DNA of 64,000 nt, from the NCBI RefSeq assembly GCF_001194135.2, contig NC_068981.1, positions 132,555,043-132,619,042 on the forward strand, given 5' to 3'. Position 1 is the first letter of the stretch. The number at the start of each line of letters is the position of its first letter. A program made the position numbers and the translations under genes. Source of the stretch: Octopus bimaculoides (taxonomy: Eukaryota). The notes below the pieces were generated by a model, which was given only the letters and a program-made list of their open reading frames with translations, did no database searches and was not told the DNA's origin. This document shows positions 1,419 to 63,432 of the stretch, piece by piece.

Positions 1419-1532
1419 AGATCTTTTCCCTTTGAACGGCAGATCGAGAAATTCTACCAGTGTCCGAAGTTTGAAAGTGTTAAGTTACAAAAAATTAATT
1501 TCTCGATCTGCCTTTCAAAGGGTAAAAAATCC
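1419..1532. mobile_element. 114-bp Merlin-like MITE
   Basis: ~35-bp TIRs at 1419-1453 and 1497-1532 (3 mismatches, 1 indel), termini AGATC...ATCC. Perfect 8-bp TSD CACGTTTC at 1411-1418 and 1533-1540. Internal 1451-1481 matches 52349-52379 at 28/31. Confidence 0.75.
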
Positions 1533-1606
1533 CACGTTTCAATATTTGGACCTCATTAGCATACTGTTGTCTTTTCCAAATCTATCTTATTCTCATTGAA
1601 ATCCAC

Positions 1607-1626
1607 TGTATGTATGTATGTATGTA

Positions 1627-1670
<44 letters not shown>

Positions 1671-1692
1671 CATGCATGCATGTATGTATATA
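1607..1692. repeat. 86-bp uninterrupted alternating purine-pyrimidine tract, (TATG)n(TG)n(CG)4(CATG)n
   Basis: Read directly from the sequence. Confidence 0.9.
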
Positions 1693-2296
1693 GTGGGGGT
1701 CTCTATATACGAATGTAATCTGTTCTAGAACTCTGTTCCTTAACCAAATTGTTTTCATTTGTTCATTATATGAGTAAGGCATGAAATAATTGTTTTATTA
1801 GTCCATCTATTAATTGCAAATACATATATGTGTGTGTACTCTTTGTCTTGCTTCGTGGCTATCTATAGTTATGTTTTTAACAAAAAATATGAAAAACATC
1901 ATCTACATAAAATATGAAAATTTGCAAGCTACATGAAGTGCATGCATAGATTGTAACAAAACATTTGTACACTCTCTCTCAACCTATGCATGTATCTAGT
2001 TTGTTGCTCAAATTCCAGTTCATTGGCTGAATATTATTTTCTTCAGAAAAACTACTTGCCATACAATATTTTTATTTAGCATACTGTTCATATATGCTTT
2101 CCTTGCAATTATATGTATGTAGTCTACTTGTAATTGTTTAAATTTCAGCTTGCTAAGAGAATGTGCTCCCAGTAGCTTATTGTACTCATGCATAATCTCA
2201 ATCACATGGCCACACCTGCACCTCTTGATATAACTGTGAAAATACATATTCTAAAACTAATACTGAATTTCTTAAAAAATATTAGAAATGCTCTGA

Positions 2297-2707
2297 GTCT
2301 TTTTGATATCAACTTGTCTGTGACCATTCCTGGTTCTAAGACACAAACTTTGTTTTAAAGTGATCTAAATTAAAACCTTCCATCAAAATTTCATGTTAAT
2401 CTATGTTCCCAGCATCAGCTTAATATCCTTTCTACTAAAGGCACAAGGCCTGAAATTTAGTGGGAGGGGAGTAGTTGATTACAGCACCCCGAAAGGGTGA
2501 AAGGCAAAGTCGACCTCAGTGGAATCTGAACTCGCCAACAGGCGAAATATTGCTAAGCATTTTGTCCAGTGCGCTGATGATTCTGCCAGCTCACCGCCCC
2601 CGGCATCAGGTTAATGATGGCAGAACTATGTTACTAAATTCTTCATTACTTTCATAATTAATTGAAACAAAGGCAGTGCACTTCAACAAAAGTATGGTAA
2701 CAAAAGG
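2297..2707. mobile_element. TTAA (piggyBac-type) MITE family pB-B, interrupted by a SINE-B
   Basis: Homologous to 7025-7710. Ends ggtaacaaaagg|TTAA (2708-2711). Left end decayed. Confidence 0.6.
2425..2598 (-). mobile_element. SINE-B copy nested in pB-B
   Basis: Reverse complement of the gagctggcagaa...ttcagattcc...gaggtcgactttgcctttc head/body seen at 44948. Confidence 0.75.
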
Positions 2708-3343: not shown

Positions 3344-4552
3344 TTAGGTTGTTTCACCTGAAATGTCGTATTTGAAAGGTAACAATAAAATATTGCAGAA
3401 GTGTTAGAGAACTGATTTGTTTAATCAAAGTATGATCCATGTTCATTTATGATGTTTACCCATATATTCCATCTTAAAAAAAGAAATTCATCTTTTGCTG
3501 TGACAAACTGTCCAAACGCTTCAATTACCTCTTCTCTATTTAAGAATGTTTTATTGCTTATGAAAAGCTCAAAATGCTTAAATAAGTGACGACCAGTTAG
3601 AGAGATATCAGGGGAATAGGGAAGATGTTGCAAAATCTCATAATTCAGGCTTTGCAACTTTTGGACCATAGCTTGAGGAGTGTGAGGACGTGCATTGTTG
3701 TGGAGCAAAATTGGGCCATCTCTATTCACTAGTCTGGGTTGCTTCTTTTTCAAATTTTCATGCATACAATCAATTTCCTGGCAATATGATGTTGCTGTTA
3801 CCATTTTTCCTTGTTGCAAAAATGAATAAAGAATAACTCCCTTTGCAGACCACCATACAGTGACCACTAACTTTTTAGGATACAGTGGTAGGTTTGGGTA
3901 GTGTTTAGGTAACTCTCCTGCATCTAATCACTGTCCTGTTCTCCTGCTTTTGTCAAAGTGTATCCATTTCTCATCACAAGTAATGATTTGATGCAAACAT
4001 GGTCTTTTTGCAGTTGAGAAAGCAATAAGGCGCACACTTCGAGACATCTGTCTTTCTGAATCTTGTTCAGTTGATGTGGAACAAACCTATTTCTTTTCTT
4101 GACATTTCCATTTTTTTACAGGTGTCCAAAAACAGTTGTGTGAGATGTTTGGAGTTTTGATGAAAGTTTTTGAACCTTTGTTCTCAGATTTTGTTCAACC
4201 AAAGCATTTAATCTATCATGCCGAATAACTGATTTTGGCCTGCCCGTTGGTTTATTTTCAAGGCTATCATCGCCTGAATGAGAGCTTAGGAACAATCTCT
4301 GAGCAGTTCTGATGTCAACAAAACCATTACCAAAGGCCCGCTTGATATTCCTTAGAGCTTCTTTGGCAGAGTGACCCGGTTTGTACTCATACGAGAAAAT
4401 CACTCAACATAGTTTGGTTGTTATCACTTTCTTAAGGTCTGTGGGTACGAATTTTGTATACAAAAAGAAAAAGAGTCAAGATTAAATGAGTTTTTTGAAT
4501 GACTGAAATAACAAGTAATTAAAAATGCAACATTTCTTGTGAAACAACCTAA
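3344..4552 (-). mobile_element. Full-length (1209-bp) decayed mariner transposon, Hsmar1/cecropia-like
   Basis: 30-bp TIRs ttaggttgtttcac(ct/aa)gaaatgt(c/t)g(t/c)attt with 4 mismatches, resembling the Hsmar1 TIR. TA TSD at 3342-3343 and 4553-4554. Confidence 0.92.
3421..4403 (-). pseudogene. Mariner transposase pseudogene (frameshifted)
   Basis: ORF 4116-4403 resembles the Hsmar1 N-terminal HTH (GDDSLENKPTGRP). ORF 3421-3867 has MVTVWWS, HNNARPH (canonical HDNARPH), YSPDISLTG (canonical YSPDLSPTD) and GSYFD. Two catalytic Asp positions are mutated. Confidence 0.92.
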
Positions 4553-44947: not shown

Positions 44948-45351
44948 AAGGCAGCGAGCTGGCAGAAACGTTAGCTCGCCGGGTGAAATGCTTAGCGGTA
45001 TTTCGTCTGCCGTTACGTTCTGAGTTCAAATTCCGCCAAGGTCGACTTTGCCTTTCATCCTTTCAGGGTCGATAAATTAAGTACCAGTTACGCACTGGGG
45101 TCGATGTAATCGACTTAATCCGTTCGTCTGTTCTTGTTTGTTCCCTCTATGTTTAGCCCCTTGTGGGCAATAACGAAATAGGTATTTCGTCTGTCTTTAC
45201 ATTCTGAGTTCAAATTCCGCCGAGGTCGACTTTGTCTTTCATCCTTTTGGGGTCGATAAATTAAGTACCTGTTGCATACTGGAGTCGATCTAATCGATTT
45301 CCCCACTCCCCCAAAATTTCGGGCCTTGTGCCTAGAGTAGAAAAGAATATT
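44948..45351 (+). mobile_element. Two adjacent SINE-B copies with different 3' tails
   Basis: 44948-45180 ends tagccccttgtgggcaataacgaaata. 45181-45351 is 5'-truncated and ends aaatttcgggccttgtgcctagagtagaaaagaat. Other SINE-B copies at ~2830, 16455, 21015, 21485, 22165, 35590, 37330, 37665, 38170, 38905, 39100, 49360, 52653 and 63222. Confidence 0.88.
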
Positions 45352-46166: not shown

Positions 46167-46973
46167 NNNNNNNNNNNNNNNNNNNNNNNNNNNNNNNNNN
46201 NNNNNNNNNNNNNNNNNNNNNNNNNNNNNNNNNNNNNNNNNNNNNNNNNNNNNNNNNNNNNNNNNNNNNNNNNNNNNNNNNNNNNNNNNNNNNNNNNNNN
46301 NNNNNNNNNNNNNNNNNNNNNNNNNNNNNNNNNNNNNNNNNNNNNNNNNNNNNNNNNNNNNNNNNNNNNNNNNNNNNNNNNNNNNNNNNNNNNNNNNNNN
46401 NNNNNNNNNNNNNNNNNNNNNNNNNNNNNNNNNNNNNNNNNNNNNNNNNNNNNNNNNNNNNNNNNNNNNNNNNNNNNNNNNNNNNNNNNNNNNNNNNNNN
46501 NNNNNNNNNNNNNNNNNNNNNNNNNNNNNNNNNNNNNNNNNNNNNNNNNNNNNNNNNNNNNNNNNNNNNNNNNNNNNNNNNNNNNNNNNNNNNNNNNNNN
46601 NNNNNNNNNNNNNNNNNNNNNNNNNNNNNNNNNNNNNNNNNNNNNNNNNNNNNNNNNNNNNNNNNNNNNNNNNNNNNNNNNNNNNNNNNNNNNNNNNNNN
46701 NNNNNNNNNNNNNNNNNNNNNNNNNNNNNNNNNNNNNNNNNNNNNNNNNNNNNNNNNNNNNNNNNNNNNNNNNNNNNNNNNNNNNNNNNNNNNNNNNNNN
46801 NNNNNNNNNNNNNNNNNNNNNNNNNNNNNNNNNNNNNNNNNNNNNNNNNNNNNNNNNNNNNNNNNNNNNNNNNNNNNNNNNNNNNNNNNNNNNNNNNNNN
46901 NNNNNNNNNNNNNNNNNNNNNNNNNNNNNNNNNNNNNNNNNNNNNNNNNNNNNNNNNNNNNNNNNNNNNNNNN
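46167..46973. other. Assembly gap
   Basis: N run. Confidence 1.
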
Positions 46974-47013
46974 ATATATACATAAATGTCTGTCTTCTAC
47001 GTAATATACAAGA

Positions 47014-47150
47014 ACGATCTTCACTACAGTGTTAGGGTTACAGTTTTAGTGTCAGGGTTAGTGTTTAGGGTTAGGGTTACGGTTAGGGATGGAATTCCCT
47101 AACGCAAACCGTAAAACCCAAAACCTAACCCTAACTCTAAACCCTTCAAA
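47014..47150. repeat. Telomere-type fold-back core related to 48099-48291 (TIRs incomplete)
   Basis: acgatcttcacta, then GGGTTA-like units, GGAATTCC at 47091-47098, then TAACCC-like units. Confidence 0.75.
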
Positions 47151-47209
47151 ATAAATCGCGCTCTCTGTATGTCTTTCGCTGTTAGACATCGTTTCCCTGT
47201 TTCTCTGCA

Positions 47210-47363
47210 ACACTTTTTACGGAAAAGGCCGATCTTTGGTAAAGCTCACCGAAGACACTTTTTACGGAAAAGGCCGATCTTTGGTAAAGATCGCCGAAAA
47301 CACTTTTTGCGGAAAAGGCTGATCTTTAGTAAAGATCGCCGAAGACACTTTTTACGGAAAAGG
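47210..47363. repeat. 45-bp tandem repeat, ~3.4 units, each with an internal hairpin
   Basis: Unit acactttttacggaaaaggccgatctttggtaaagatcgccgaag starts at 47210, 47255, 47300 and 47345. Consensus stem cgatcttt/aaagatcg (perfect in unit 2). Confidence 0.92.
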
Positions 47364-48098
47364 TCAATATTTAGGTAATCGTACCGAAAGATCGCCAGAG
47401 TATGTAAGAGTCAAAGCTCATTGGCCGCGACGGCAGCCTGGCTTAATTAAATTGAGCAGCATGAACTTTTCTGTTGTCTTAGCTTACGTCTTTTCTCCAA
47501 CTTCTGCTCCCCACCCCGAAAATTTTGTTGTTATGAATGCGCTTGGCGTTGATTACACCCGTTATCCTTGTTGCATTTACAGTGATAAGCTACTTAGGTA
47601 TCCCTGCAGATTTACAGCCACACGAATCCTCTAGAAACAAGGTATTATCGAGCTGAGATATTTAATTGGTTAGGGCACCGGACAGAGTTGGTACTTACAC
47701 TGAATTCGGCAGAGGTTCCATTCTCAGTGAAACTGCGTCACTTCACGTAGTGTCGAAATTATATTATCACACTATTAAATCCACATATGGGTGCTTTTTT
47801 TTAAATATATACTAAAAGGCATCTTCTACCCCAAGAAAGGGAAAAAATGATCGGATCTTTTTTTAATATTTCTTAAGTAAATTAAAAATTGTTAAATGTA
47901 AATCTATTTAAAATATCAATATCTTCCACTTGTTCCAGATGTTTATTCATTGTGTAATTTGGGTGTTTACGTTTTGTCGGCAATGTGGCGCTTTCTTCGT
48001 TATTAACCTGTACTGTTTTACATATGGAAACAAATTAATGAAAGAAAACATAAGAACTTCAGGTCATTGTTATGTGTGTGTATATAATAACTTGATAG

Positions 48099-48291
48099 GG
48101 TAATTTTTCAGATTAACACCCGCACGATCTTCACTAGGTTGTGTTATGGTTAGGGTTTTAGAGCTAAGGTTAGTGTTTAGGGTTAGGGTTACGGTCGGAA
48201 TTCCCTAACCCTAACCCTAAAACCCTAACCCTGACCCTAAAACTCTAACCCCCTAGTGAAGATCGTGCGGGTGTTAATCTGAAAAATTACC
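48099..48291. mobile_element. 193-bp Merlin-like MITE with telomere-type hairpin core
   Basis: Perfect 40-bp TIR ggtaatttttcagattaacacccgcacgatcttcactagg (48099-48138 / 48252-48291). 8-bp TSD cttgatag / cttgctag (7/8). GGAATTCC at 48197-48204. Confidence 0.85.
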
Positions 48292-50081
48292 CTTGCTAGA
48301 TTTAGAGACTGCTGCAACGTCAGTAACTGGATCTGCAAATCTCAGACAGGTCTGAATTCCTACAGAGGACGACACAGTAAGACGTAAAACCAAGAACACT
48401 GTGCAGCTGTATTCTTCTTAATCCTTATTTGTCGAAGCGACGAGAGAGTCCAACAACATGAACAACAACAACATGCATGCATGTATCAGTTAATCAACTG
48501 ATCAACCAATCAATTGGTCATAAAATGCGGACGAGTTTGCCTCTCCAGAGCTGACTTTACAAATCATCCATGTAAACACGATAAAAAGCCTTAGGATGAA
48601 TTCATCCAGTTTCCAGCAGTTAATCCTTTATGAAAATTATGTGGTAGAGAATTGCCCAGCCGATCTGGAGTAACAAACCTTAAAAGTACTCAAGGTACTG
48701 TACAGATTGAGCACCTGATCTCAACACATAAATATGAGCGTCGCACCTGCAGCAAAAAGTCTAAGTTGCCTGCTGGCTTTAAAAGCCATTGTAAGTCCCA
48801 GGTTCATTAAGAAAGAAAGAAGAGAATAATAAATCCAGAAACATAATAACTTGTTAGTGAAGGTCATGCTCGCCTAACATGTTTACAGCAATCATCATAA
48901 AAATACATTAAAAAAATCTGTTGTTTTTTTTTTACTCAAGAAAAAGTGAAACAAAAGGAATAAATGAGAAAGAGAGAGAGAGAGAGAAAAAAGAGAGAGA
49001 GAGAGAAAGAGAGGGAGAGAGAGAGAGATTCAGTTTGTTTCATGTTTATTTCATTCATTTCGTTACATTTTCAAATGCAGATTTATCTCTCCCAGTTTGT
49101 AAACATTAAATATTTACATTGTAATCATAAGAACAATGCTGGGTGGTAACGAAAAAGTACTTTAAACACTTGTATTCAAGACATTTTTGTTTTATCTTGC
49201 AGTCACTGAAGTGTAACAGATATTGCAGCTCCAATGTAGCATATGCTGCGACAAATACCATATAATTTATGATAGGTAGCACTGCCATATCAGATCTCTG
49301 CAATAAGATCCGAACATAGATATTGGGAGTGAAATGTTTGGCAGAAGAAGAGTTAGTCGATGTTAATCGATTACACCGACTCCAGTTATTTAGCTAGTAC
49401 TTTATTTTATTGATCCCAGGAAGACGAGAGGCACGGTTCATCTCGGTAGAGTTTGAATTCTGAACAAATACTGTGAAGAATGATTCTATCAATCTATTGT
49501 CTTTACACACACACACACCTACAAGAGGTGTGTTTGTTAGATAAATTATCAATTAAAATGTGTACATTCTTTCAGTGTATGAGGACAAAACACGAACTGA
49601 AGGTGGAAATATTGACATTATTCGGCAATGAAAGGCAGGCATGTTATATAGGATTCTAAACAATCTCTTTATTTATTTATCCCGTCGTTGCTTGGTAATG
49701 TTCACACTAGAATGTCTTGGCGAACTTTCAAAATAGCACACCCACCTAAGTTGCATTGTCTTCGTTTTGACGGGATTCTCCCCCCCCCCTACCCAAATGA
49801 TGCTTCCATGAAAATGATGCTTCCCATTAAAAAAATTTTCTTACTTCCCTTCCAGACCAATTGTGTCCAATTTTTTTTTTGCTCTATGAACTTAAAAACA
49901 ATACGTGACGCCTTTCCGGAAAGTTTTGTCATTTTTAACCAAATCAAAAGATAAGATTTGTACGTGATAGCTGTGATAAAATGAAAGTAAACATTAGAAG
50001 ACGAAGTTTTAAAACAAAAGAAATGCGTGAAAGATAATACATATACACACAGAGAGAAATAATAAAGGTAGATTGATGGTG

Positions 50082-50338
50082 NNNNNNNNNNNNNNNNNNN
50101 NNNNNNNNNNNNNNNNNNNNNNNNNNNNNNNNNNNNNNNNNNNNNNNNNNNNNNNNNNNNNNNNNNNNNNNNNNNNNNNNNNNNNNNNNNNNNNNNNNNN
50201 NNNNNNNNNNNNNNNNNNNNNNNNNNNNNNNNNNNNNNNNNNNNNNNNNNNNNNNNNNNNNNNNNNNNNNNNNNNNNNNNNNNNNNNNNNNNNNNNNNNN
50301 NNNNNNNNNNNNNNNNNNNNNNNNNNNNNNNNNNNNNN
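50082..50338. other. Assembly gap
   Basis: N run. Confidence 1.
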
Positions 50339-50632
50339 TTAACTACATACACTCGCATTTATAGCGAAGATTTTGAAAATTTCTTCGGATTCCTGTTTTC
50401 CACAACGAAGATTACGATTTTACCAAAAATATAAATAAATAAAATCAGCTTTTCAGATTTAAAATTTTCGCTTTAGACATCATCCCGCCTCTAATTTTTT
50501 AAAATACTTTTTTAAAGTTTTGCAATTCCAGCTATTTAATATCACAAATTAAAAATGGAGAAATTCAAATTTTCCACTAAGTTTCTTATGATAAACCTTA
50601 TGATAAAATGTGCTAAATAGGAAAGTATATTC

Positions 50633-50830
50633 AACTAGAAAAGCACTCGGAGAGCGCAGACCTCCGCCAAGCAGATCATTTCCACCCATATACACACATG
50701 CTGAAAATCACCCAATTTCCCAAACCAACGCCAGCAAAAACAACCTTCTTCCATACTTATCTCGACCATCGTCATCATCAACACTGTCTCTTCTTTCACC
50801 ACAATCACCGTCAAAACTACGATCACCACA
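50633..50830 (+). mobile_element. 5' end of a Helentron-like non-autonomous element (DINE/HINE type)
   Basis: aactagaaaagcactcggagagcgcagACCTCCGCCAAg. The 11-mer at 50660-50670 is the exact reverse complement of 52635-52645. Right boundary uncertain. Confidence 0.55.
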
Positions 50831-51125
50831 ATCAGTTTCTTTTTAGAGTTGAAAATCCATTATCCAATACTCATGGGACTGAGATTGTTGCAGATTTTTG
50901 ATTTTTCTAATTTCGGAGTGCTTTCTTGAAAAAAAAAAAAAATTGAATCTACAAAACGGAACAGTTTGAGGATAGAAACCAGGTCTAAACACAATAGCTT
51001 ATAGACATACTCTGAATGTAGTTCTATATAAATCTTTAATAATTTTTTTATACTTAAGACCATCAGAAATGTTAAGATATCAACCTCTACCCACGTTGTC
51101 ATACTTTGATTAACAGGTTACAACA

Positions 51126-51690
51126 TAGATTAGATTACTTAGATAAGTTTCGACCGTAGTTGACTCAGGCCATGTCTAATTTAATAGCACCACTTGGTAG
51201 AGATACACAGTCAGCTCTGGGGAACCGTAGCCCATTCAAGAAGAGGGTTATTGTTTTCAGAGACATATTTGGGTGTGGGTGCTTTATCTGGTATTTGTTG
51301 GGGGGTAATCATCTAAGGATCGTTTGAATGCCGTGAAGTCACTTTCCTCCTTTATGTGTGTCTGGCACGATGTTGAAGAGAGCAGGGCCAATTGAGGTGA
51401 ANNNNNNNNNNAAGTCACTTTCCTCCTTTATGTGTGTCTGGCACGATGTTGAAGAGAGCAGGGCCAATTGAGGTGAAATAGTTCTGTCATAGTGTTGTGA
51501 TACGACACGAACATTTCTGTAGTGGACGGATGGCACGGGGGCCAAGCCTCGGACGAATTTTAAAGATGGGCAATGTTGATGGAATATTTTCCACATAATA
51601 CAGATGATATAGAGCTCACAGTGGCGGTGGAGAGAGCAAAGCCTGAGCTTTTTGAGTCGATCCCACTAGTCAAGGCTTGTCATGTCATCC
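51126..51690 (-). mobile_element. CR1/L2-group LINE 3' fragment
   Basis: Minus strand reads DMTSLD*WDRLKKLRLCSLHRHCELYIICIMWKI...FTSIGPALFNIVP...HIKEESDFTAFKRSLDD (frameshift) QIPDKAPTPKY...NNPLLEW. Short tandem tail ttatctaagtaatctaatcta. Confidence 0.78.
51402..51411. other. 10-N gap with duplicated flanks (contig overlap)
   Basis: 51337-51401 is repeated at 51412-51476. Confidence 0.9.
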
Positions 51691-51849
51691 TCCGCAGACT
51701 TCCGCCAAGCAGCTCTTTTTAAGATAGATTCGCGAGTAAAATTACTAATAGAGAAACGAAAATAAACTTTGGAAACAGCAACGCTACTATAGGTTACGTG
51801 GAGACGATGAACGCGTTTTCAAGGGAAATAATCAAAGAATGTAACATTG

Positions 51850-52419
51850 GGATCTATTTTAAAACGGGGGCCACATTTTTCATTAATGTTTTACGTAGTG
51901 TTTTTGGTACGGAAAGACTTTCAAACTTCGTATACTTATCTATTTTGTGTTATAGAACAGAAAAATATTTTTGTATTCGAATTTATTTCATGTAAAAAAT
52001 TGTCTTATTTCGATAATTTCAACCAATCACTGACAAGTATTCAGTTGTTTATATTTACTCTTTTGGCTGATTAAGCGATGTAAAGCGTATTTAATCTCCA
52101 TACCTTCGTTTTATTTGCTTTTTTCATTTTAAATTTGCTTTAACCCTAACCCTAACCCTAGGGTTAGGGTTAGGGTTAATTGTTTCAGAATCGTTTGTTT
52201 ATGTAGTCGGCACTTAATGTATATCGGCTGAATGGACGTCAGTGATTGGTTGAAATTACAGAAATACGACAACTTTCACATGGAATAACTTATGGATTTC
52301 TTTTTTTTTTTTAAGAAGACTAAGAGAAAAAGATGTTTTATATGACACATTCTACCAGTGTTCCAAGTTTCAAAGTGTTTCGTTAATGAAAAATGTGGCC
52401 CCCGTTTTAAAAAATATCC
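51850..52419. mobile_element. 570-bp Merlin-like MITE with central telomeric palindrome
   Basis: 37-bp TIR ggatctattttaaaacgggggccacatttttcattaa (2 mismatches). Perfect 8-bp TSD taacattg at 51842-51849 and 52420-52427. Subterminal inverted repeats (aaccaatcactgac / gtcagtgattggtt). Confidence 0.88.
52140..52179. repeat. Perfect 40-bp palindrome t(taaccc)3ta(gggtta)3a
   Basis: Read directly from the sequence. Centre at 52159/52160. Confidence 0.97.
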
Positions 52420-52904
52420 TAACATTGTAATACTTCATGTAAAGTAAATCTAACAAATGAAAAATCCTTTAAGAATCCATAAAAATTGCCAGATCACTAC
52501 CAAAATTTTATCATCTGTTCCTTGTGTCAATACCCACTTTTCCTGCACGTTTGATCAAATACCGTTCACAACTTTTTGAGTTATTTTGCATACAGACGGA
52601 CAAACCAACGACGATGAAAAAATAACCTCCTTCTTTGGCGGAGGTAATAATCCTTTCTACTAGAGGTACAAAACCTGAAATTTTGGGGGAGGGGATAGCC
52701 GCTTACATCGACCTCAGTGCTTGACTGGTACTTGTTTCATCAGCTCCGAAAAAATAAAGGGAAAGTCGACCTTGGCCGAACGGTATATTCAGTAATGGAA
52801 GCATGTTGTACAACTTGGCGTATTCTTTTTAAGAAAGGTAAAATCGTAATTAATTTGGTTTACTGAAAAGAAAGAAAAAAATAAATAAAAGAAACAAAGC
52901 CCTG

Positions 52905-54050
52905 ACATGATTATGTCGTTAAGAATCTCGCTTAGCGATCATGTGGTTTCAGGTTCAATCCTACTTCGTGGCACTTTGAGAAAATGTCTTCTACAATATC
53001 TCTGGGCTGGTCAACGCCTTTTGAGTGAATATGGTAAACGGAAACTGTAGAATGCTACATGCACGCGCGCATATGTGTGTGTTTGTCCCCCCCCCCGTTT
53101 GTCAACCGATGTTGGCTTATTTACATCCCCGTAATCTAGCGTTTCGGCAAAAGAAAACGATAGAATAAATACTGGATCTTTTTGGTTTGACGGGCAACAC
53201 TTGTTTTCTTAACGAAACACTTTCAAACTTGGGATACTGGTAGAATGTGTCATATAAAACATCTTTTTCTCTTAGCCTTCTTAACAAAAATTAGTTCTTA
53301 ATAAGTTATTTCATGTTAAAGTTGTCGTATTTCTGTAATTTCAATCAATCACTGACGTCTATTCAGCTGAATATAGTTAGTGCTCTTTTTATAAACAATA
53401 ATTTTTACCGGTGTCAAGAGTGTTATTCCCTGTTTAATTATATCATTATTTCCTAGTAAGGGTTTAGGGTGTTAGGGTTCGGGTTTTAGAGTTGGGGTTA
53501 GGGTTAGGGTTATGAGTGAGGTTATGGCAAAAATAATCATAACCCTAACCGTAAACCTAAAACTAACCCTAACTCTAAAACCCGAACCATAACCCTAAAA
53601 CCCTAAAGCTAAAACCAGTACAAACGCACGAACGATGTCATAAATAAGAGTAACACGGGTAGTTGTTGTTGACAAACAATGGCACTAATTTTATTCAAGG
53701 GAAAAGATCCCATGACACCGTTGTTTACATTCCACGCCATTAATTGTTTTCACCTCAATAGACATCAGTGATTGGTTGAAATTACCGAAATACGACAACT
53801 TTTTCCATGAAATAACTTCGAATACAAAAATTTTTCTCGGTTCTATAATACAAAATATACAAGTATACGAAGTTTGAAAGTGTTTCGGTACCAAAAACAC
53901 TACAGAAAACATTAATGAAAAATGTTGCCCGTCAAACCAAAAAGATCCTAAGTACTAGACTTAAGAAATAAAGCACTAAGTTCGATTAAAGTTTAATTAC
54001 TAGACCTTTCAAGGCCACCGCAGTCCAAGGACTGAAAACAAAAATGACAA
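52905..54050 (+). mobile_element. Diverged SINE-A split by a Merlin-like MITE
   Basis: Head at 52905. ...gatagaataaatact | insert | taagtactagactt... matches the consensus gatagaataagtactaggctt of 22745. Confidence 0.7.
53174..53948. mobile_element. 775-bp Merlin-like MITE with telomere-type fold-back core
   Basis: Perfect 26-bp TIR ggatctttttggtttgacgggcaaca. 8-bp TSD taaatact / taagtact (7/8). Subterminal arms homologous to 51850-52419 in the opposite orientation. Core 53458-53616. Confidence 0.88.
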
Positions 54051-54061
54051 AAGTAAAATCA

Positions 54062-54578
54062 AAATTAGGGTTTACTGAAAAACAACTGTCAATGTGTTTT
54101 TTAATTAAATTTAGATTTACTGAAGAATAAAATTGTCGATGTGTTTCTTGAATGTAATTTAGGTTTACTGGAAAAAAAAATTGTTAACGTTGTTTTTAAA
54201 TTCAATTTAGGCTTACTCTTTTACTTGTTTCAGTCATTTGACTGCGGCCATGCTGGAGCACCGCCTTTAGTCGAGAAAATGGACCCCAGGACTTATTCTT
54301 TGTAAGCCTAGTACTTATTCTATCGGTCTCTTTTTGCCGAACCGCTAAGTTACGGGGACGTAAACACACCAGCATCGGTTGTCAAGCGATGGTGGGGGTA
54401 CAAACACAGACACACATATATATATATACATATATACGACAGGCTTCTTTCAGTTTCCGTCTACCAAATCCACTCACAAGGCTAATGATAAAAAAATAAA
54501 ACAACTATCAATGTGTTTTTGAATTTAATTTAGGCTTATTGAAAAAATAATTGTCAACGTATTCTTAAATATAATTTG
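54062..54578. repeat. Degenerate 45-48-bp minisatellite interrupted by SINE-A (54221-54483)
   Basis: Anchor (t/c)ttactg-like at 54071, 54116, 54164, 54212 and 54535. Confidence 0.7.
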
Positions 54579-57512: not shown

Positions 57513-57866
57513 GGAGAAGACTTCCTTTTGTACCCCCCCCCCAAAAAAAAACTCCCCCCTTTTTTTTTATTTAATTTTTTTTTTCACAAACCCCCATTTT
57601 CAGCTATGGAGAGTACGAATCTGAGAAAAATTGGCATTTTGAAATTACCCCACCTCTAAATTCTTCATTTTATGTGGAAAAATACGGAGATTATGATTCA
57701 GAAAAAATTTCCAAAAATTTTTCTAGTTAGAGTTAGGGCTAAGGTTAGGGTTTTAGGGTTATGGTTAGGGTTAGGGTTACAGAAAAAAGTGAAAAATGAA
57801 GTAAGAGGAGCAAGCAATTTCAAAATTCTGCCAACGAATCCAGGTGGTGAGAGGTTCACAAGATCC
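57513..57866. mobile_element. Unclassified element with a one-sided TTAGGG-type tract (57727-57779)
   Basis: Left part homologous to 45996-46166. Right boundary uncertain. Confidence 0.6.
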
Positions 57867-57967
57867 GATTTTTTTCCTCATAACTTTTAAGAAAATGGAT
57901 ATCTTTTAATGAAATATTATATAAATACATTTCAAACGGCATAGATGGAAGTGATATACAGATATTG

Positions 57968-62953: not shown

Positions 62954-63221
62954 CAACACATGGGACGAATAAGGCCTGAAATAACACTGCACACCTTACA
63001 GTGCATTGAATCATAATATGGTACTGGGCTTATTGTAGGATAATGAGAGAATGGCAAAAGCTTAATAGTGAAAGGTGTTTTGCAGCTTTGGCAGCATGGT
63101 TACATGTTCATTTCTGTGGTAAGAAGTTGTATGTTTAAATTAATTTAAAATTCCTAAACTAAAAGTAATTTTTTTTCAATAATTATTTTCTTACAATATT
63201 CTTACAATATCATCATAATTT

Positions 63222-63432
63222 AAGGCGGCAAGCTAGCAGAGATGTTAGCATGCCAGGCAAAATACTTAGTGGTATTTCATCTGCTGTTACGCTCTGAGTT
63301 CAAATCCCGCTGAGGTCGACTTTGCCTTTCATTCTTTTGGGGTCGATAAATTAAGTACCAGTTACATACTGGGGTCAATCTATTTGACTGGCCCCCTCCA
63401 CCAAAGTTTTGGGCCTTGTGCCTAGAGTAGAA
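63222..63432 (+). mobile_element. SINE-B (gggccttgtgcctagagtaga tail variant)
   Basis: aaggcggcaagctagcaga...gagttcaaatccc...gaggtcgactttgcc. Confidence 0.85.

What the first reader, a model, noticed from the sequence alone, without database searches (positions are those of the whole stretch)
48099..53948. Family of GG-ended, 8-bp-TSD (Merlin-like) MITEs carrying telomere-repeat fold-back cores
Seen: three elements within 6 kb (48099-48291, 51850-52419, 53174-53948) have GG...CC TIRs of 26-40 bp, 8-bp TSDs (7/8, 8/8, 7/8) and a core made of TTAGGG/CCCTAA-type repeats arranged as an inverted repeat. A fourth core without complete TIRs lies at 47014, and a core-less 114-bp relative at 1419. Established: GG termini with 8-9-bp TSDs characterise the Merlin/IS1016 superfamily, and TTAGGG is the telomere repeat in the molluscs that have been studied. 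Inference: this is a non-autonomous transposon group that disperses interstitial telomeric sites, possibly recruiting telomere-binding proteins or forming G4/cruciform structures that aid transposition or protect the element. No transposase is present in the window, and I cannot tell whether the family is already catalogued.
Basis: partly seen in the sequence, partly recalled or inferred. Interest (0 to 1): 0.82.

Follow-up and report, generated by a model that had tools for sequence, protein, structure and literature searches.

The report
Octopus jumping elements carrying telomere-repeat palindromes
Several families of small non-coding transposons in an octopus genome carry telomere-type repeats as an inverted pair at their centre, and have scattered well over a thousand short telomere-like sites through the chromosomes; this is a real and unusual variant of an ordinary kind of mobile DNA.

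Summary
The genome is Octopus bimaculoides or a very close relative.

- **Elements in the window.** 48099-48291 (F1), 51850-52419 (F2) and 53174-53948 (F3) have GG...CC inverted ends and 8-bp target duplications. Each has a central inverted pair of TTAGGG/CCCTAA arrays. The decayed copy at 47014 and the coreless 114-bp relative at 1419 are also real.
- **Genome-wide families.**
  - F2 copies are 98.6% identical to each other, and 27 of 29 have perfect 8-bp duplications.
  - F1 and F3 are older.
  - Unoccupied paralogous sites show that F1 and F2 are insertions.
  - The cores belong to the families: 781 sites carry the F2 centre and 600 carry the F1-type centre, against about 8 loci with long perfect TTAGGG arrays.
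- **Core types.** There are at least three unrelated types, and one has the opposite polarity.
- **Core evolution.** The core changes 2-4 times faster than the arms, and coreless relatives also transposed. It looks like cargo rather than a required part.
- **Merlin assignment.** This is plausible but unproven. The genome holds at least 150 Merlin transposase fragments. One Merlin element shows GG ends and an 8-bp duplication. No transposase-bearing element with these ends was found.
- **Function.** The proposed functional roles were not tested.

The parts
48099..48291 (.). F1 element, 193 bp, palindromic over its whole length. Inverted ends 48099-48138 and 48252-48291. Telomere-type core 48139-48251, G-strand array first, then centre GGAATTCC, then C-strand array.
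   Evidence: At least 40 full-length genomic copies at 78-88% identity. ssDNA fold -73 kcal/mol, z = -16.6.
48091..48098 (.). Left target duplication of F1 (CTTGATAG). The right copy is 48292-48299 (CTTGCTAG), 7/8.
   Evidence: Family-wide 8-bp duplications.
47014..47145 (.). Decayed F1 copy. It keeps only the inner 14 nt of the left end, followed by a G array, ATGGAATTCC, then a C array. The outer ends are missing.
   Evidence: 80% identity to F1 positions 26-154.
47210..47378 (+). 45-bp tandem repeat, 3.7 copies. Its unit contains TTTTTACGGAAA and the head-to-head pair GGCCGATCTTTGG / AAAGATCGCC. These resemble the end motifs of the F4-type elements.
   Evidence: TRF. Compared by eye with L061 and L077 11190-11605. 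The relation is inferred.
51850..52419 (+). F2 element, 570 bp. Ends 51850-51886 and 52383-52419. Arm A 51887-52139. Perfect 40-bp palindromic core 52140-52179, C-strand first and then G-strand. Arm B 52180-52382.
   Evidence: At least 40 copies at 97-99% identity. Mean pairwise identity 98.6%.
51842..51849 (.). Left target duplication of F2 (TAACATTG). The right copy is 52420-52427, 8/8.
   Evidence: 27 of 29 other copies are perfect.
53174..53948 (-). F3 element, 775 bp. It shares arms A and B with F2 but lies in the opposite orientation. Ends 53174-53202 and 53920-53948. Core 53463-53607, G-strand array first and then C-strand array. Its internal sequence and centre differ from those of F2.
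   Evidence: At least 40 full-length copies at 79-94% identity.
53166..53173 (.). Left target duplication of F3 (TAAATACT). The right copy is 53949-53956 (TAAGTACT), 7/8.
   Evidence: 5 of 8 other copies are perfect.
1419..1532 (.). Coreless 114-bp relative of F2/F3. Ends (A)GATCTTTTCCCTTTGAACGGCAGATCG / GGATTTTTTACCCTTTGAAAGGCAGATCG. Target duplication CACGTTTC at 1411-1418 and 1533-1540, 8/8.
57719..57782 (+). G-strand-only telomere-type array of 9 units, including TTTTAGGG as in F1 cores. About 100 bp away, at 57880-57925, is a motif that resembles the subterminal repeat of Merlin family M1.
   Evidence: Not followed further.

Best explanation
[quoted passage not shown] They are short, non-coding, cut-and-paste DNA transposons. 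A transposase encoded elsewhere moves them.

How they move. The enzyme recognises the GG-ended inverted ends, cuts the element out, and inserts it at a staggered 8-bp cut, which becomes the duplication. This much is shown by the anatomy, by the family-wide duplications and by the unoccupied paralogous sites. The enzyme is most likely of the Merlin (IS1595-like DDE) superfamily. That step is inferred.

What the core is. The central telomere-repeat palindrome is a heritable part of each family's master copy. It is most likely passive cargo, not a working part.

How the core arose (inferred). These elements fold back on themselves, so they are prone to break at the centre. Telomerase, or copying from telomeric DNA, extended the broken ends, and rejoining left two arrays facing each other. 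Alternatively, a broken transposon end was capped by a new telomere and then turned into a palindrome by fusion of sister chromatids. That would account for F1 and F4, which are palindromic from end to end.

Consequence. Once formed, the core is copied with every transposition. The families have seeded well over a thousand short interstitial telomere-type sites.
For: MITE nature.
- Inverted ends, GG...CC termini and 8-bp duplications occur in 27/29 F2 copies, about 18/22 F1 copies (8/8 or 7/8) and 5/8 F3 copies.
- Removing the element and one duplication copy gives sequence that matches uninterrupted paralogous repeats. This holds for two F2 copies and one F1 copy.
- The elements carry no coding remnant, and the window has no Merlin ORF.
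- Target sites show a weak palindromic preference, A|NAANNTTN|T.

Merlin.
- The published definition is 5'-GG ends with 8- or 9-bp duplications (PMC8101967).
- There are at least 150 PF12762 matches in this genome, several with open frames.
- Merlin families M1 and M4 have GGCA... ends.
- The M1 copy at L086 1794-4011 has duplication GTCAATGT/ATCAATGT, an unoccupied paralogous site 680 bp away, and an ORF that hits PF12762.
- Recently active Merlin families are reported in O. vulgaris (PMC13282606).

Core as an inherited family feature.
- All full-length hits of F1, F2 and F3 span the core.
- F1 copies share the same variant units and the same asymmetric centre.
- 600 and 781 genomic sites carry the two centres, against 0 in the reversed-pattern controls.

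Core as cargo.
- The non-consensus fraction in F2 is 3.05% in the core against 0.65-1.4% in the arms. In F1 it is 16% in the core against 3-5% in the ends.
- Coreless relatives have perfect duplications: window 1419, and L077 11190-11605 in O. sinensis.
- One coreless and two half-core F2 variants exist.

Origin by repeated events.
- F2 and F3 share their arms at about 88-90% identity, but not their internal sequence or core.
- There are three unrelated centres.
- The core always lies at the centre of the fold-back.
- One F3 copy has its centre flipped, which shows that the two arrays recombine with each other.
Against: - No autonomous element with F1, F2 or F3 ends was found. None of the 22 Merlin loci I could read has them.
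- The F2 end followed by non-arm sequence occurs once in the genome, as a truncated solo end with no ORF.
- The F1 inner end is never followed by anything but the G array.
- These searches were narrow.
- MULE transposases are present (at least 105 matches). hAT and Mutator are reported as recently active in O. vulgaris (PMC13282606). The enzyme is therefore not settled.
- The break-and-heal origin predicts G-strand first and then C-strand. F2 has the reverse order, which the model does not explain.
- Three independent gains of one kind of core in one genome could also mean that the core is selected for.
- TTAGGG as this animal's telomere repeat rests on the literature (PMC13218726). The assembly has no telomeric arrays at its scaffold ends.
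Confidence: 0.6

Rival explanations
1. The elements are moved by a transposase of another superfamily that also makes duplications of about 8 bp (MULE/Mutator, hAT, P or an undescribed one). The GG ends would then be a coincidence.
For: - No Merlin partner was found.
- MULE domains are present, with at least 105 matches.
- Mutator, hAT and many unclassified TIR families are listed as recently active in O. vulgaris (PMC13282606).
- The ends of F1, F2 and F3 share nothing with Merlin M1 and M4 beyond the GG.
Against: - From general knowledge, hAT ends usually start YARNG and P ends CATG, and MULE duplications are usually 9-10 bp.
- Here the duplication is 8 bp in 27 of 29 F2 copies, and none was scored as 9 bp.
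- GG ends with 8-bp duplications are exactly what the Merlin element M1 shows in this genome.
Confidence: 0.25
2. The telomeric palindrome is a working part of the element. It might bind telomere-repeat-binding proteins, form a cruciform or G4 that brings the ends together, or shield the element from silencing. It would then have been gained repeatedly because it raises transposition success.
For: - At least three unrelated cores occur in families that each reached hundreds to thousands of copies.
- The core sits exactly at the fold-back centre.
- The exact F1 inner end was never found without the array next to it.
Against: - The core is the least conserved part of F1 and F2.
- Unit number drifts, and the palindrome centre is a mutation hot spot.
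- Coreless relatives and coreless or half-core variants have normal duplications or exist in the genome.
- The standard F2 core has only three GGG runs per strand.
- Both polarities occur, so no strand-specific feature is conserved.
Confidence: 0.15
3. The cores were not made by telomerase at a break. They were copied as filler from existing telomeric or interstitial arrays by template switching during gap repair, then doubled by fold-back synthesis. Either polarity can arise this way.
For: - F2 has the polarity that end-healing cannot give.
- Variant units are mirrored in the two arms of F1 and F3, as inverted duplication of one array would produce.
- F1 and the F4 copy in L061 share one asymmetric centre although their ends differ. 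This suggests that core modules pass between elements.
Against: There is no direct evidence for the template. The mirrored variants could also come from gene conversion between arms. Only one F4 copy with a core was read.
Confidence: 0.3
4. The palindromic telomere sequences are assembly or sequencing artefacts, such as chimeric joins.
For: The assembly is gapped and has unmerged overlaps.
Against: - Hundreds of dispersed copies have individual target duplications and private mutations.
- Unoccupied paralogous sites exist.
- Related sequences occur in a separate O. sinensis assembly.
Confidence: 0.01

Closest known systems
Non-autonomous elements (MITEs) of the Merlin superfamily (Feschotte 2004; definition as quoted in PMC8101967)
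   Same: 5'-GG ends, inverted ends of 26-40 bp within the 24-462 bp range given for Merlin, 8-bp target duplications, no coding capacity, and many Merlin transposase genes in the same genome.
   Different: No autonomous partner with matching ends was found. I found no report of a Merlin MITE with a central telomere-repeat palindrome.
MITEs that carry hitch-hiking simple or tandem repeats: (GTCY)n MITEs of Lepidoptera, Xstir of Xenopus, and MITE-like elements linked to the oyster HindIII satellite and bivalve BIV160 (listed in PMC6947457)
   Same: A short DNA transposon holds a repeat array inside it and spreads it with each insertion. The array varies in unit number between copies. Some copies expand into tandem arrays; compare the ~965-bp unit with two F1 copies on contig 30.
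   Different: In those cases the repeat is specific to the family and lies in one direction. Here it is the telomere hexamer, arranged as two arrays facing each other at the exact centre.
Fold-back elements (Drosophila FB type) and hairpin-forming MITEs
   Same: F1 and F4 are palindromic from end to end, and F2 and F3 have long imperfect inverted arms. All fold strongly as single strands.
   Different: From general knowledge, FB elements have very long ends built of their own tandem repeats and make 9-bp duplications.
Short interstitial telomeric sequences inserted by telomerase during double-strand-break repair in vertebrates (general knowledge)
   Same: A few TTAGGG units at internal sites. 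This is my proposed source of the cores.
   Different: Those are single, one-directional insertions at unique sites. Here the arrays are paired, inverted, sit inside a transposon, and are multiplied by transposition.
Telomere-associated retroelements that carry or target telomere repeats (Penelope-like Athena/Coprina, TRAS/SART, MoTeR; PMC7367193 for MoTeR)
   Same: Mobile elements that physically contain host telomere repeats.
   Different: Those are retroelements with repeats at one end in one direction, and they sit at or near chromosome ends. These are DNA transposons with the repeats in the middle, dispersed along chromosome arms.

Membership tests
Merlin superfamily (non-autonomous member) | Inverted ends that begin with 5'-GG | tested here: met
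   - F1 starts GGTAAT, F2 and F3 start GGATCT, F4 starts GGCGAT.
- This holds in nearly all genomic copies.
Merlin superfamily (non-autonomous member) | Target site duplication of 8 or 9 bp | tested here: met
   - Perfect 8-bp duplications: 27/29 F2, 9-10/22 F1 with 8 more at 7/8, and 5/8 F3.
- Unoccupied paralogous sites contain one copy of the 8 bp.
Merlin superfamily (non-autonomous member) | Ends shared with an autonomous element that encodes a DDE_Tnp_IS1595 (PF12762) transposase | tested here: inconclusive
   - None of the Merlin loci read (L055-L075, L086, and L077 of O. sinensis) has F1, F2 or F3 ends as its own ends.
- Pattern searches found no partner.
- Coverage was small: 22 of at least 150 loci, mostly with 1.5-kb flanks and many gaps.
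Merlin superfamily (non-autonomous member) | Merlin transposase genes present in the same genome, with the same end and duplication type | tested here: met
   - At least 150 PF12762 matches.
- M1 at L086 1794-4011 has ends GGCATAAC.../...GTTATGTC, duplication GTCAATGT/ATCAATGT and an unoccupied paralogous site. Its ORF hits PF12762 at 1.5e-17.
- M4 ends start GGCACTGTC.
Merlin superfamily (non-autonomous member) | Mobilisation by a Merlin transposase | not testable with these tools
   This needs a transposition assay.
MITE (structural class) | Short, non-coding, inverted ends, target duplications, high copy number, homogeneous families | tested here: met
   - Length 114-775 bp, with no ORF or transposase remnant.
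- Families have hundreds to thousands of candidate copies.
- F2 mean pairwise identity is 98.6%.
hAT superfamily (non-autonomous member) | 8-bp duplication with target consensus nTnnnnAn and ends starting YARNG (general knowledge) | tested here: not met
   - The duplication is 8 bp, but the ends start GG.
- Target positions 2-3 are A-rich and 6-7 T-rich, the opposite of nTnnnnAn.
MULE/Mutator superfamily (non-autonomous member) | Duplications usually 9-10 bp, with ends shared with an element that encodes a MULE transposase | tested here: inconclusive
   - The duplication is 8 bp, and none was scored as 9 bp.
- MULE domains exist in the genome.
- Their element ends were not examined.

The most novel reading that the evidence does not exclude
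New mobile elements are repeatedly born at telomere-type junctions. A transposon end, or a fold-back element broken at its centre, is extended by telomerase. It is then fused head to head, as in a sister-chromatid telomere fusion. The fusion junction, now flanked by two inverted transposon ends, becomes a transposable unit. On this reading the octopus MITEs are mobilised fossils of chromosome healing and fusion events. Their cores may still act as internal binding sites for telomere proteins or as fragile sites.
Probability: 0.2. Interest if true: 0.75.

Novelty: new variant of a known kind. Interest (0 to 1): 0.5.

Why it matters
- **Source of internal telomere-type sites.** Counting only the two exact centre motifs, these elements account for at least about 1,400 internal telomere-type sites. 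The same assembly has about 8 loci with long perfect arrays. Transposition, not chromosome fusion, would then be the main source of interstitial telomeric sequence in this octopus. That affects how telomere-probe signals and apparent fusion relics are read in cephalopod karyotype work.
- **Testable interplay with telomerase.** Several unrelated families gained the same kind of core. This makes a link between DNA transposons, palindrome breakage and telomerase directly testable.
- **An active system.** F2 copies are 98-99% identical with perfect duplications. This points to a DNA transposon system that was active very recently, and may still be active, in an animal where such tools are lacking.
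- **Annotation.** The cores can mislead repeat annotation and the telomere-motif scans used in scaffolding.

Tried and rejected
1. **F1/F2/F3 ends in Merlin loci.** I looked for them in 20 Merlin loci by short-word BLAST and fuzzy motif search. The only hits were nearby nested F1-type or telomere cores, not shared ends.
3. **"Not-this-base" patterns.**
   - F2 end not followed by either arm: one hit, a truncated solo end with no ORF.
   - F2 arm A not followed by the core: 7 hits, including one coreless and two half-core variants, none near a Merlin match.
   - F1 inner end not followed by G: no hits.
4. **Intact 313-aa Merlin ORF of L056, next to an F1-type element.** It is single-copy, and its relatives are at most 78% identical. 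It is not the partner of a young family.
5. **Larger flanks of Merlin loci.** I did not try to get that sequence by another route. Exact-protein look-up omits this genome.
6. **Coding remnants inside the elements.** None were found.
7. **A common origin for F1 and F3 cores.** I first thought they shared one. Eight more F3 copies showed a different centre and a different order of units, so I dropped the idea. The shared centre of F1 and F4 rests on a single F4 copy.
8. **Telomere arrays as part of Merlin M1.** I first thought so.
   - In L061 the core belongs to a separate F4 element inserted into M1.
   - In L071, L072 and L086, M1 is inserted 13 bp from an F1-derived half element, and an unoccupied site is on hand.
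9. **Confirming TTAGGG at chromosome ends from the assembly.** No arrays lie at scaffold ends.
10. **Literature.** I made eight searches in total. None turned up a description of telomere-core MITEs. Repbase and Dfam could not be consulted.

Full report
**The observation**

I read 46800-54200 and scanned it for inverted repeats.

- F1 (48099-48291) has 40-bp inverted ends that start GGTAAT. Its target duplications are CTTGATAG/CTTGCTAG. The core runs G-strand array, GGAATTCC, C-strand array.
- F2 (51850-52419) has 37-bp ends that start GGATCT. Its duplications are a perfect TAACATTG pair. At its centre is a perfect 40-bp palindrome, TTAACCCTAACCCTAACCCTAGGGTTAGGGTTAGGGTTAA.
- F3 (53174-53948) has 29-bp ends that start GGATCT. 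Its duplications are TAAATACT/TAAGTACT. Its core is about 145 bp.
- The copy at 47014 is an F1 member that has lost its outer ends.
- The 114-bp element at 1419-1532 is a coreless relative of F2 and F3. It has a perfect CACGTTTC duplication, and its first G is mutated to A.

The two gaps named by the scan's program lie between elements. The 10-N gap has the same exact 66 bases on both sides, so it is an unmerged overlap.

**The organism**

The window is part of a 2.34-Gb assembly whose first 30 contigs are the large ones. A Merlin ORF from it is 94-95% identical to proteins named Octopus bimaculoides. TTAGGG is the only experimentally determined telomere motif in cephalopods (PMC13218726). The assembly could not confirm it, because perfect (TTAGGG)10 occurs at only about 8 loci and none is at a scaffold end.

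**These are real transposon families**

| Family | Full-length copies scored | Identity to window copy | First-look candidates | 8-bp duplications in other copies |
|---|---|---|---|---|
| F1 | at least 40 | 78-88% | 1328 | 9-10 of 22 perfect, 8 more at 7/8 |
| F2 | at least 40 | 97-99% | 1482 | 27 of 29 perfect |
| F3 | at least 40 | 79-94% | 3566 | 5 of 8 perfect |

- F2 copies are on average 98.6% identical to each other.
- I removed the element and one duplication copy from each locus and compared the result with everything I held. Two F2 copies and one F1 copy then matched uninterrupted paralogous repeats, each with a single copy of the 8 bp. They are therefore insertions.
- Target sites show a weak palindromic preference, A|NAANNTTN|T.

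**Anatomy**

- F1 is one palindrome from end to end. As a single strand it folds at -73 kcal/mol, z = -16.6.
- F2 and F3 are one group in opposite orientations. They share arm A (first 190 bp or so) and arm B (last 225 bp or so) at about 88-90% identity. Their internal sequences and cores are unrelated.
- F2 also folds strongly, z = -17.
- A fourth family, F4, has ends that start GGCGATCTTTCC. I met it inside a Merlin copy (L061). A coreless form with a perfect CATTTTTT duplication occurs in O. sinensis (L077 11190-11605).
- The ends of F2, F3, F4 and the 114-bp element all contain a GATCTTT-type motif, so they may form one wider group. F1's ends are different.

**The cores**

The cores belong to the families, not to single copies.

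- F1 copies share the same irregular units (GTGTTAGGG, TTAGGG, TTTTAGGG, TCAGGG ...), mirrored in both arms.
- F1 copies also share one asymmetric centre, seen as GGGACGGAATTCCC or GGGAATTCCGTCCC depending on the strand read.
- The one F4 core I read has the same centre.
- F3 copies share another centre, GGTTATGAGTGAGGTTATGGCAAAAATAATCATAACC. In one copy that centre is flipped relative to the arms, which shows that the two arrays recombine.
- F2 has perfect canonical units in the reverse order, C-strand first and then G-strand, with 2 to 4 units a side.
- In the genome, the F1-type centre occurs 600 times with at most one mismatch. The F2 centre occurs 781 times exactly. Reversed-pattern controls gave 0.

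So there are at least three separate origins of a telomere-repeat palindrome in GG-ended, 8-bp-duplication elements of one genome.

**Is the core needed?**

The evidence leans against it.

- In F2 the core has 3.05% non-consensus positions, against 0.65-1.4% in the arms and 1.1-1.3% in the ends. Changes cluster at the palindrome centre, and 5 of 30 copies have gained a unit.
- In F1 the ends have 3-5% and the core 16%, with many unit gains and losses.
- Coreless relatives transposed normally. Coreless and half-core F2 variants exist.
- The usual F2 core has three GGG runs per strand, below what an intramolecular G4 needs.

**Which transposase?**

- The window has none.
- Merlin is defined by 5'-GG ends and 8- or 9-bp duplications (PMC8101967).
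- The genome has at least 150 matches to the Merlin transposase domain.
- I defined two Merlin families. M1 has ends that start GGCATAACTACAGAG and long subterminal repeats. M4 has ends that start GGCACTGTCATGG.
- At L086 an M1 copy of 2218 bp has duplications GTCAATGT/ATCAATGT. An unoccupied copy of the same site lies 680 bp away, and the ORF hits PF12762.
- Merlin elements in this genome therefore behave exactly as the MITEs do.
- None of the Merlin loci I could read has F1, F2 or F3 ends. Three pattern searches for an autonomous partner failed.
- MULE transposases are also present.

Merlin is the best candidate. I put it at about 0.6.

**Origin of the cores (inference)**

- The cores always sit at the fold-back centre, which is where palindromes break.
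- Two broken ends, each extended by telomerase and then rejoined, give G-strand first and then C-strand. That is the order in F1, F3 and F4.
- F1 and F4 are palindromic throughout. This also fits a transposon end capped by a new telomere and then doubled by sister fusion.
- Neither route gives the F2 order, which stays unexplained. Template switching with fold-back synthesis could give either order.
- The mirrored variant units need either inverted duplication of one array or conversion between arms.

**Comparison with what is known**

- MITEs that carry hitch-hiking microsatellites or satellites are known, in molluscs too (PMC6947457). Fold-back elements, telomerase-made interstitial repeats and telomere-bearing retroelements are also known.
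- My eight literature searches turned up no report of DNA-transposon MITEs with a central telomere-repeat palindrome.
- A detailed 2026 repeat annotation of O. vulgaris does not mention telomeres.
- Dfam and Repbase could not be checked.

**Verdict**

I rate it a new variant of a known kind, with interest 0.5.

Noticed in passing
L086 (contig 15, 26980600-26986300) 1090-1340 and 4012-4252; also L071 1-38 and L072 275-433: An F1-derived half element recurs 13 bp from the insertion site of Merlin M1. It consists of CACGATTTTCACTAG, a G-strand array of about 190 nt, and the outer part of the right end. The sequence beyond it is conserved too, and in L086 the whole unit repeats with a period of about 2.9 kb. 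Either a composite unit has been copied to several chromosomes, or M1 prefers this site.
   Followed up: partly
L009 (contig 30, about 5.01 Mb) 536-2020: A tandem unit of about 965 bp holds two F1 copies. Six of the 40 best F1 hits lie on contig 30 between 4.6 and 6.1 Mb, although that contig is 0.4% of the genome. Five of 23 F1 loci have another telomere core within 1.5 kb, against 0 of 29 F2 loci. This suggests a MITE-derived satellite-like array.
   Followed up: partly
L079 (contig 25, 18279066-18279898): One F3 copy has the 37-bp centre of its core inverted relative to the arms. This implies flip-flop recombination between the two telomeric arrays.
   Followed up: no
window 47210-47378: A 45-bp tandem repeat (3.7 copies) sits next to the decayed F1 copy. 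Its unit looks like two F4-type element tips placed head to head, plus the TTTTACGGAAA motif found next to F4 cores.
   Followed up: partly
window 51336-51477: The 10-N gap at 51402-51411 is flanked by the same exact 66 bases on both sides. This is an unmerged assembly overlap, not missing sequence.
   Followed up: yes
L056 (contig 3, about 32.245 Mb) 1435-2376, minus strand: An intact 313-aa Merlin-type ORF appears to be single-copy. Its nearest relatives are at most 78% identical, and only within the coding part. It could be a domesticated transposase gene or a lone old element. A short F1-type element lies 425 bp downstream.
   Followed up: partly
whole assembly: Perfect (TTAGGG)10 occurs at only about 8 loci, all internal to scaffolds (for example contig 1 at 176.76 Mb and contig 12 at 52.06 Mb). 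The assembly seems to lack its telomeres, or some scaffolds join at chromosome ends.
   Followed up: no
window 3421-3927, minus strand: Fragment of a mariner-type transposase (Pfam Transposase_1, E = 6e-19).
   Followed up: yes
window 30608-31078, plus strand: An open frame with a PHD-type zinc finger runs into an assembly gap. It may be the tail of a retroelement protein.
   Followed up: partly
window 45090-45351, 63221-63432 and elsewhere; L008, L029, L050: A short dispersed repeat (…CTAGGCACAAGGCCCGAAATTTTGGG…GGTACTTAATTTATCGACCCC…) is very common. It served twice as an insertion target of F2. It looks like a SINE.
   Followed up: no
L077 (O. sinensis CM016877.1, 48827994-48848863) 11934-12045 and 11190-11605: A fragment of the F2/F3 arm and a complete coreless F4-like element lie within 1.2 kb of a Merlin ORF in another octopus species. 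These end types are therefore shared between species.
   Followed up: partly
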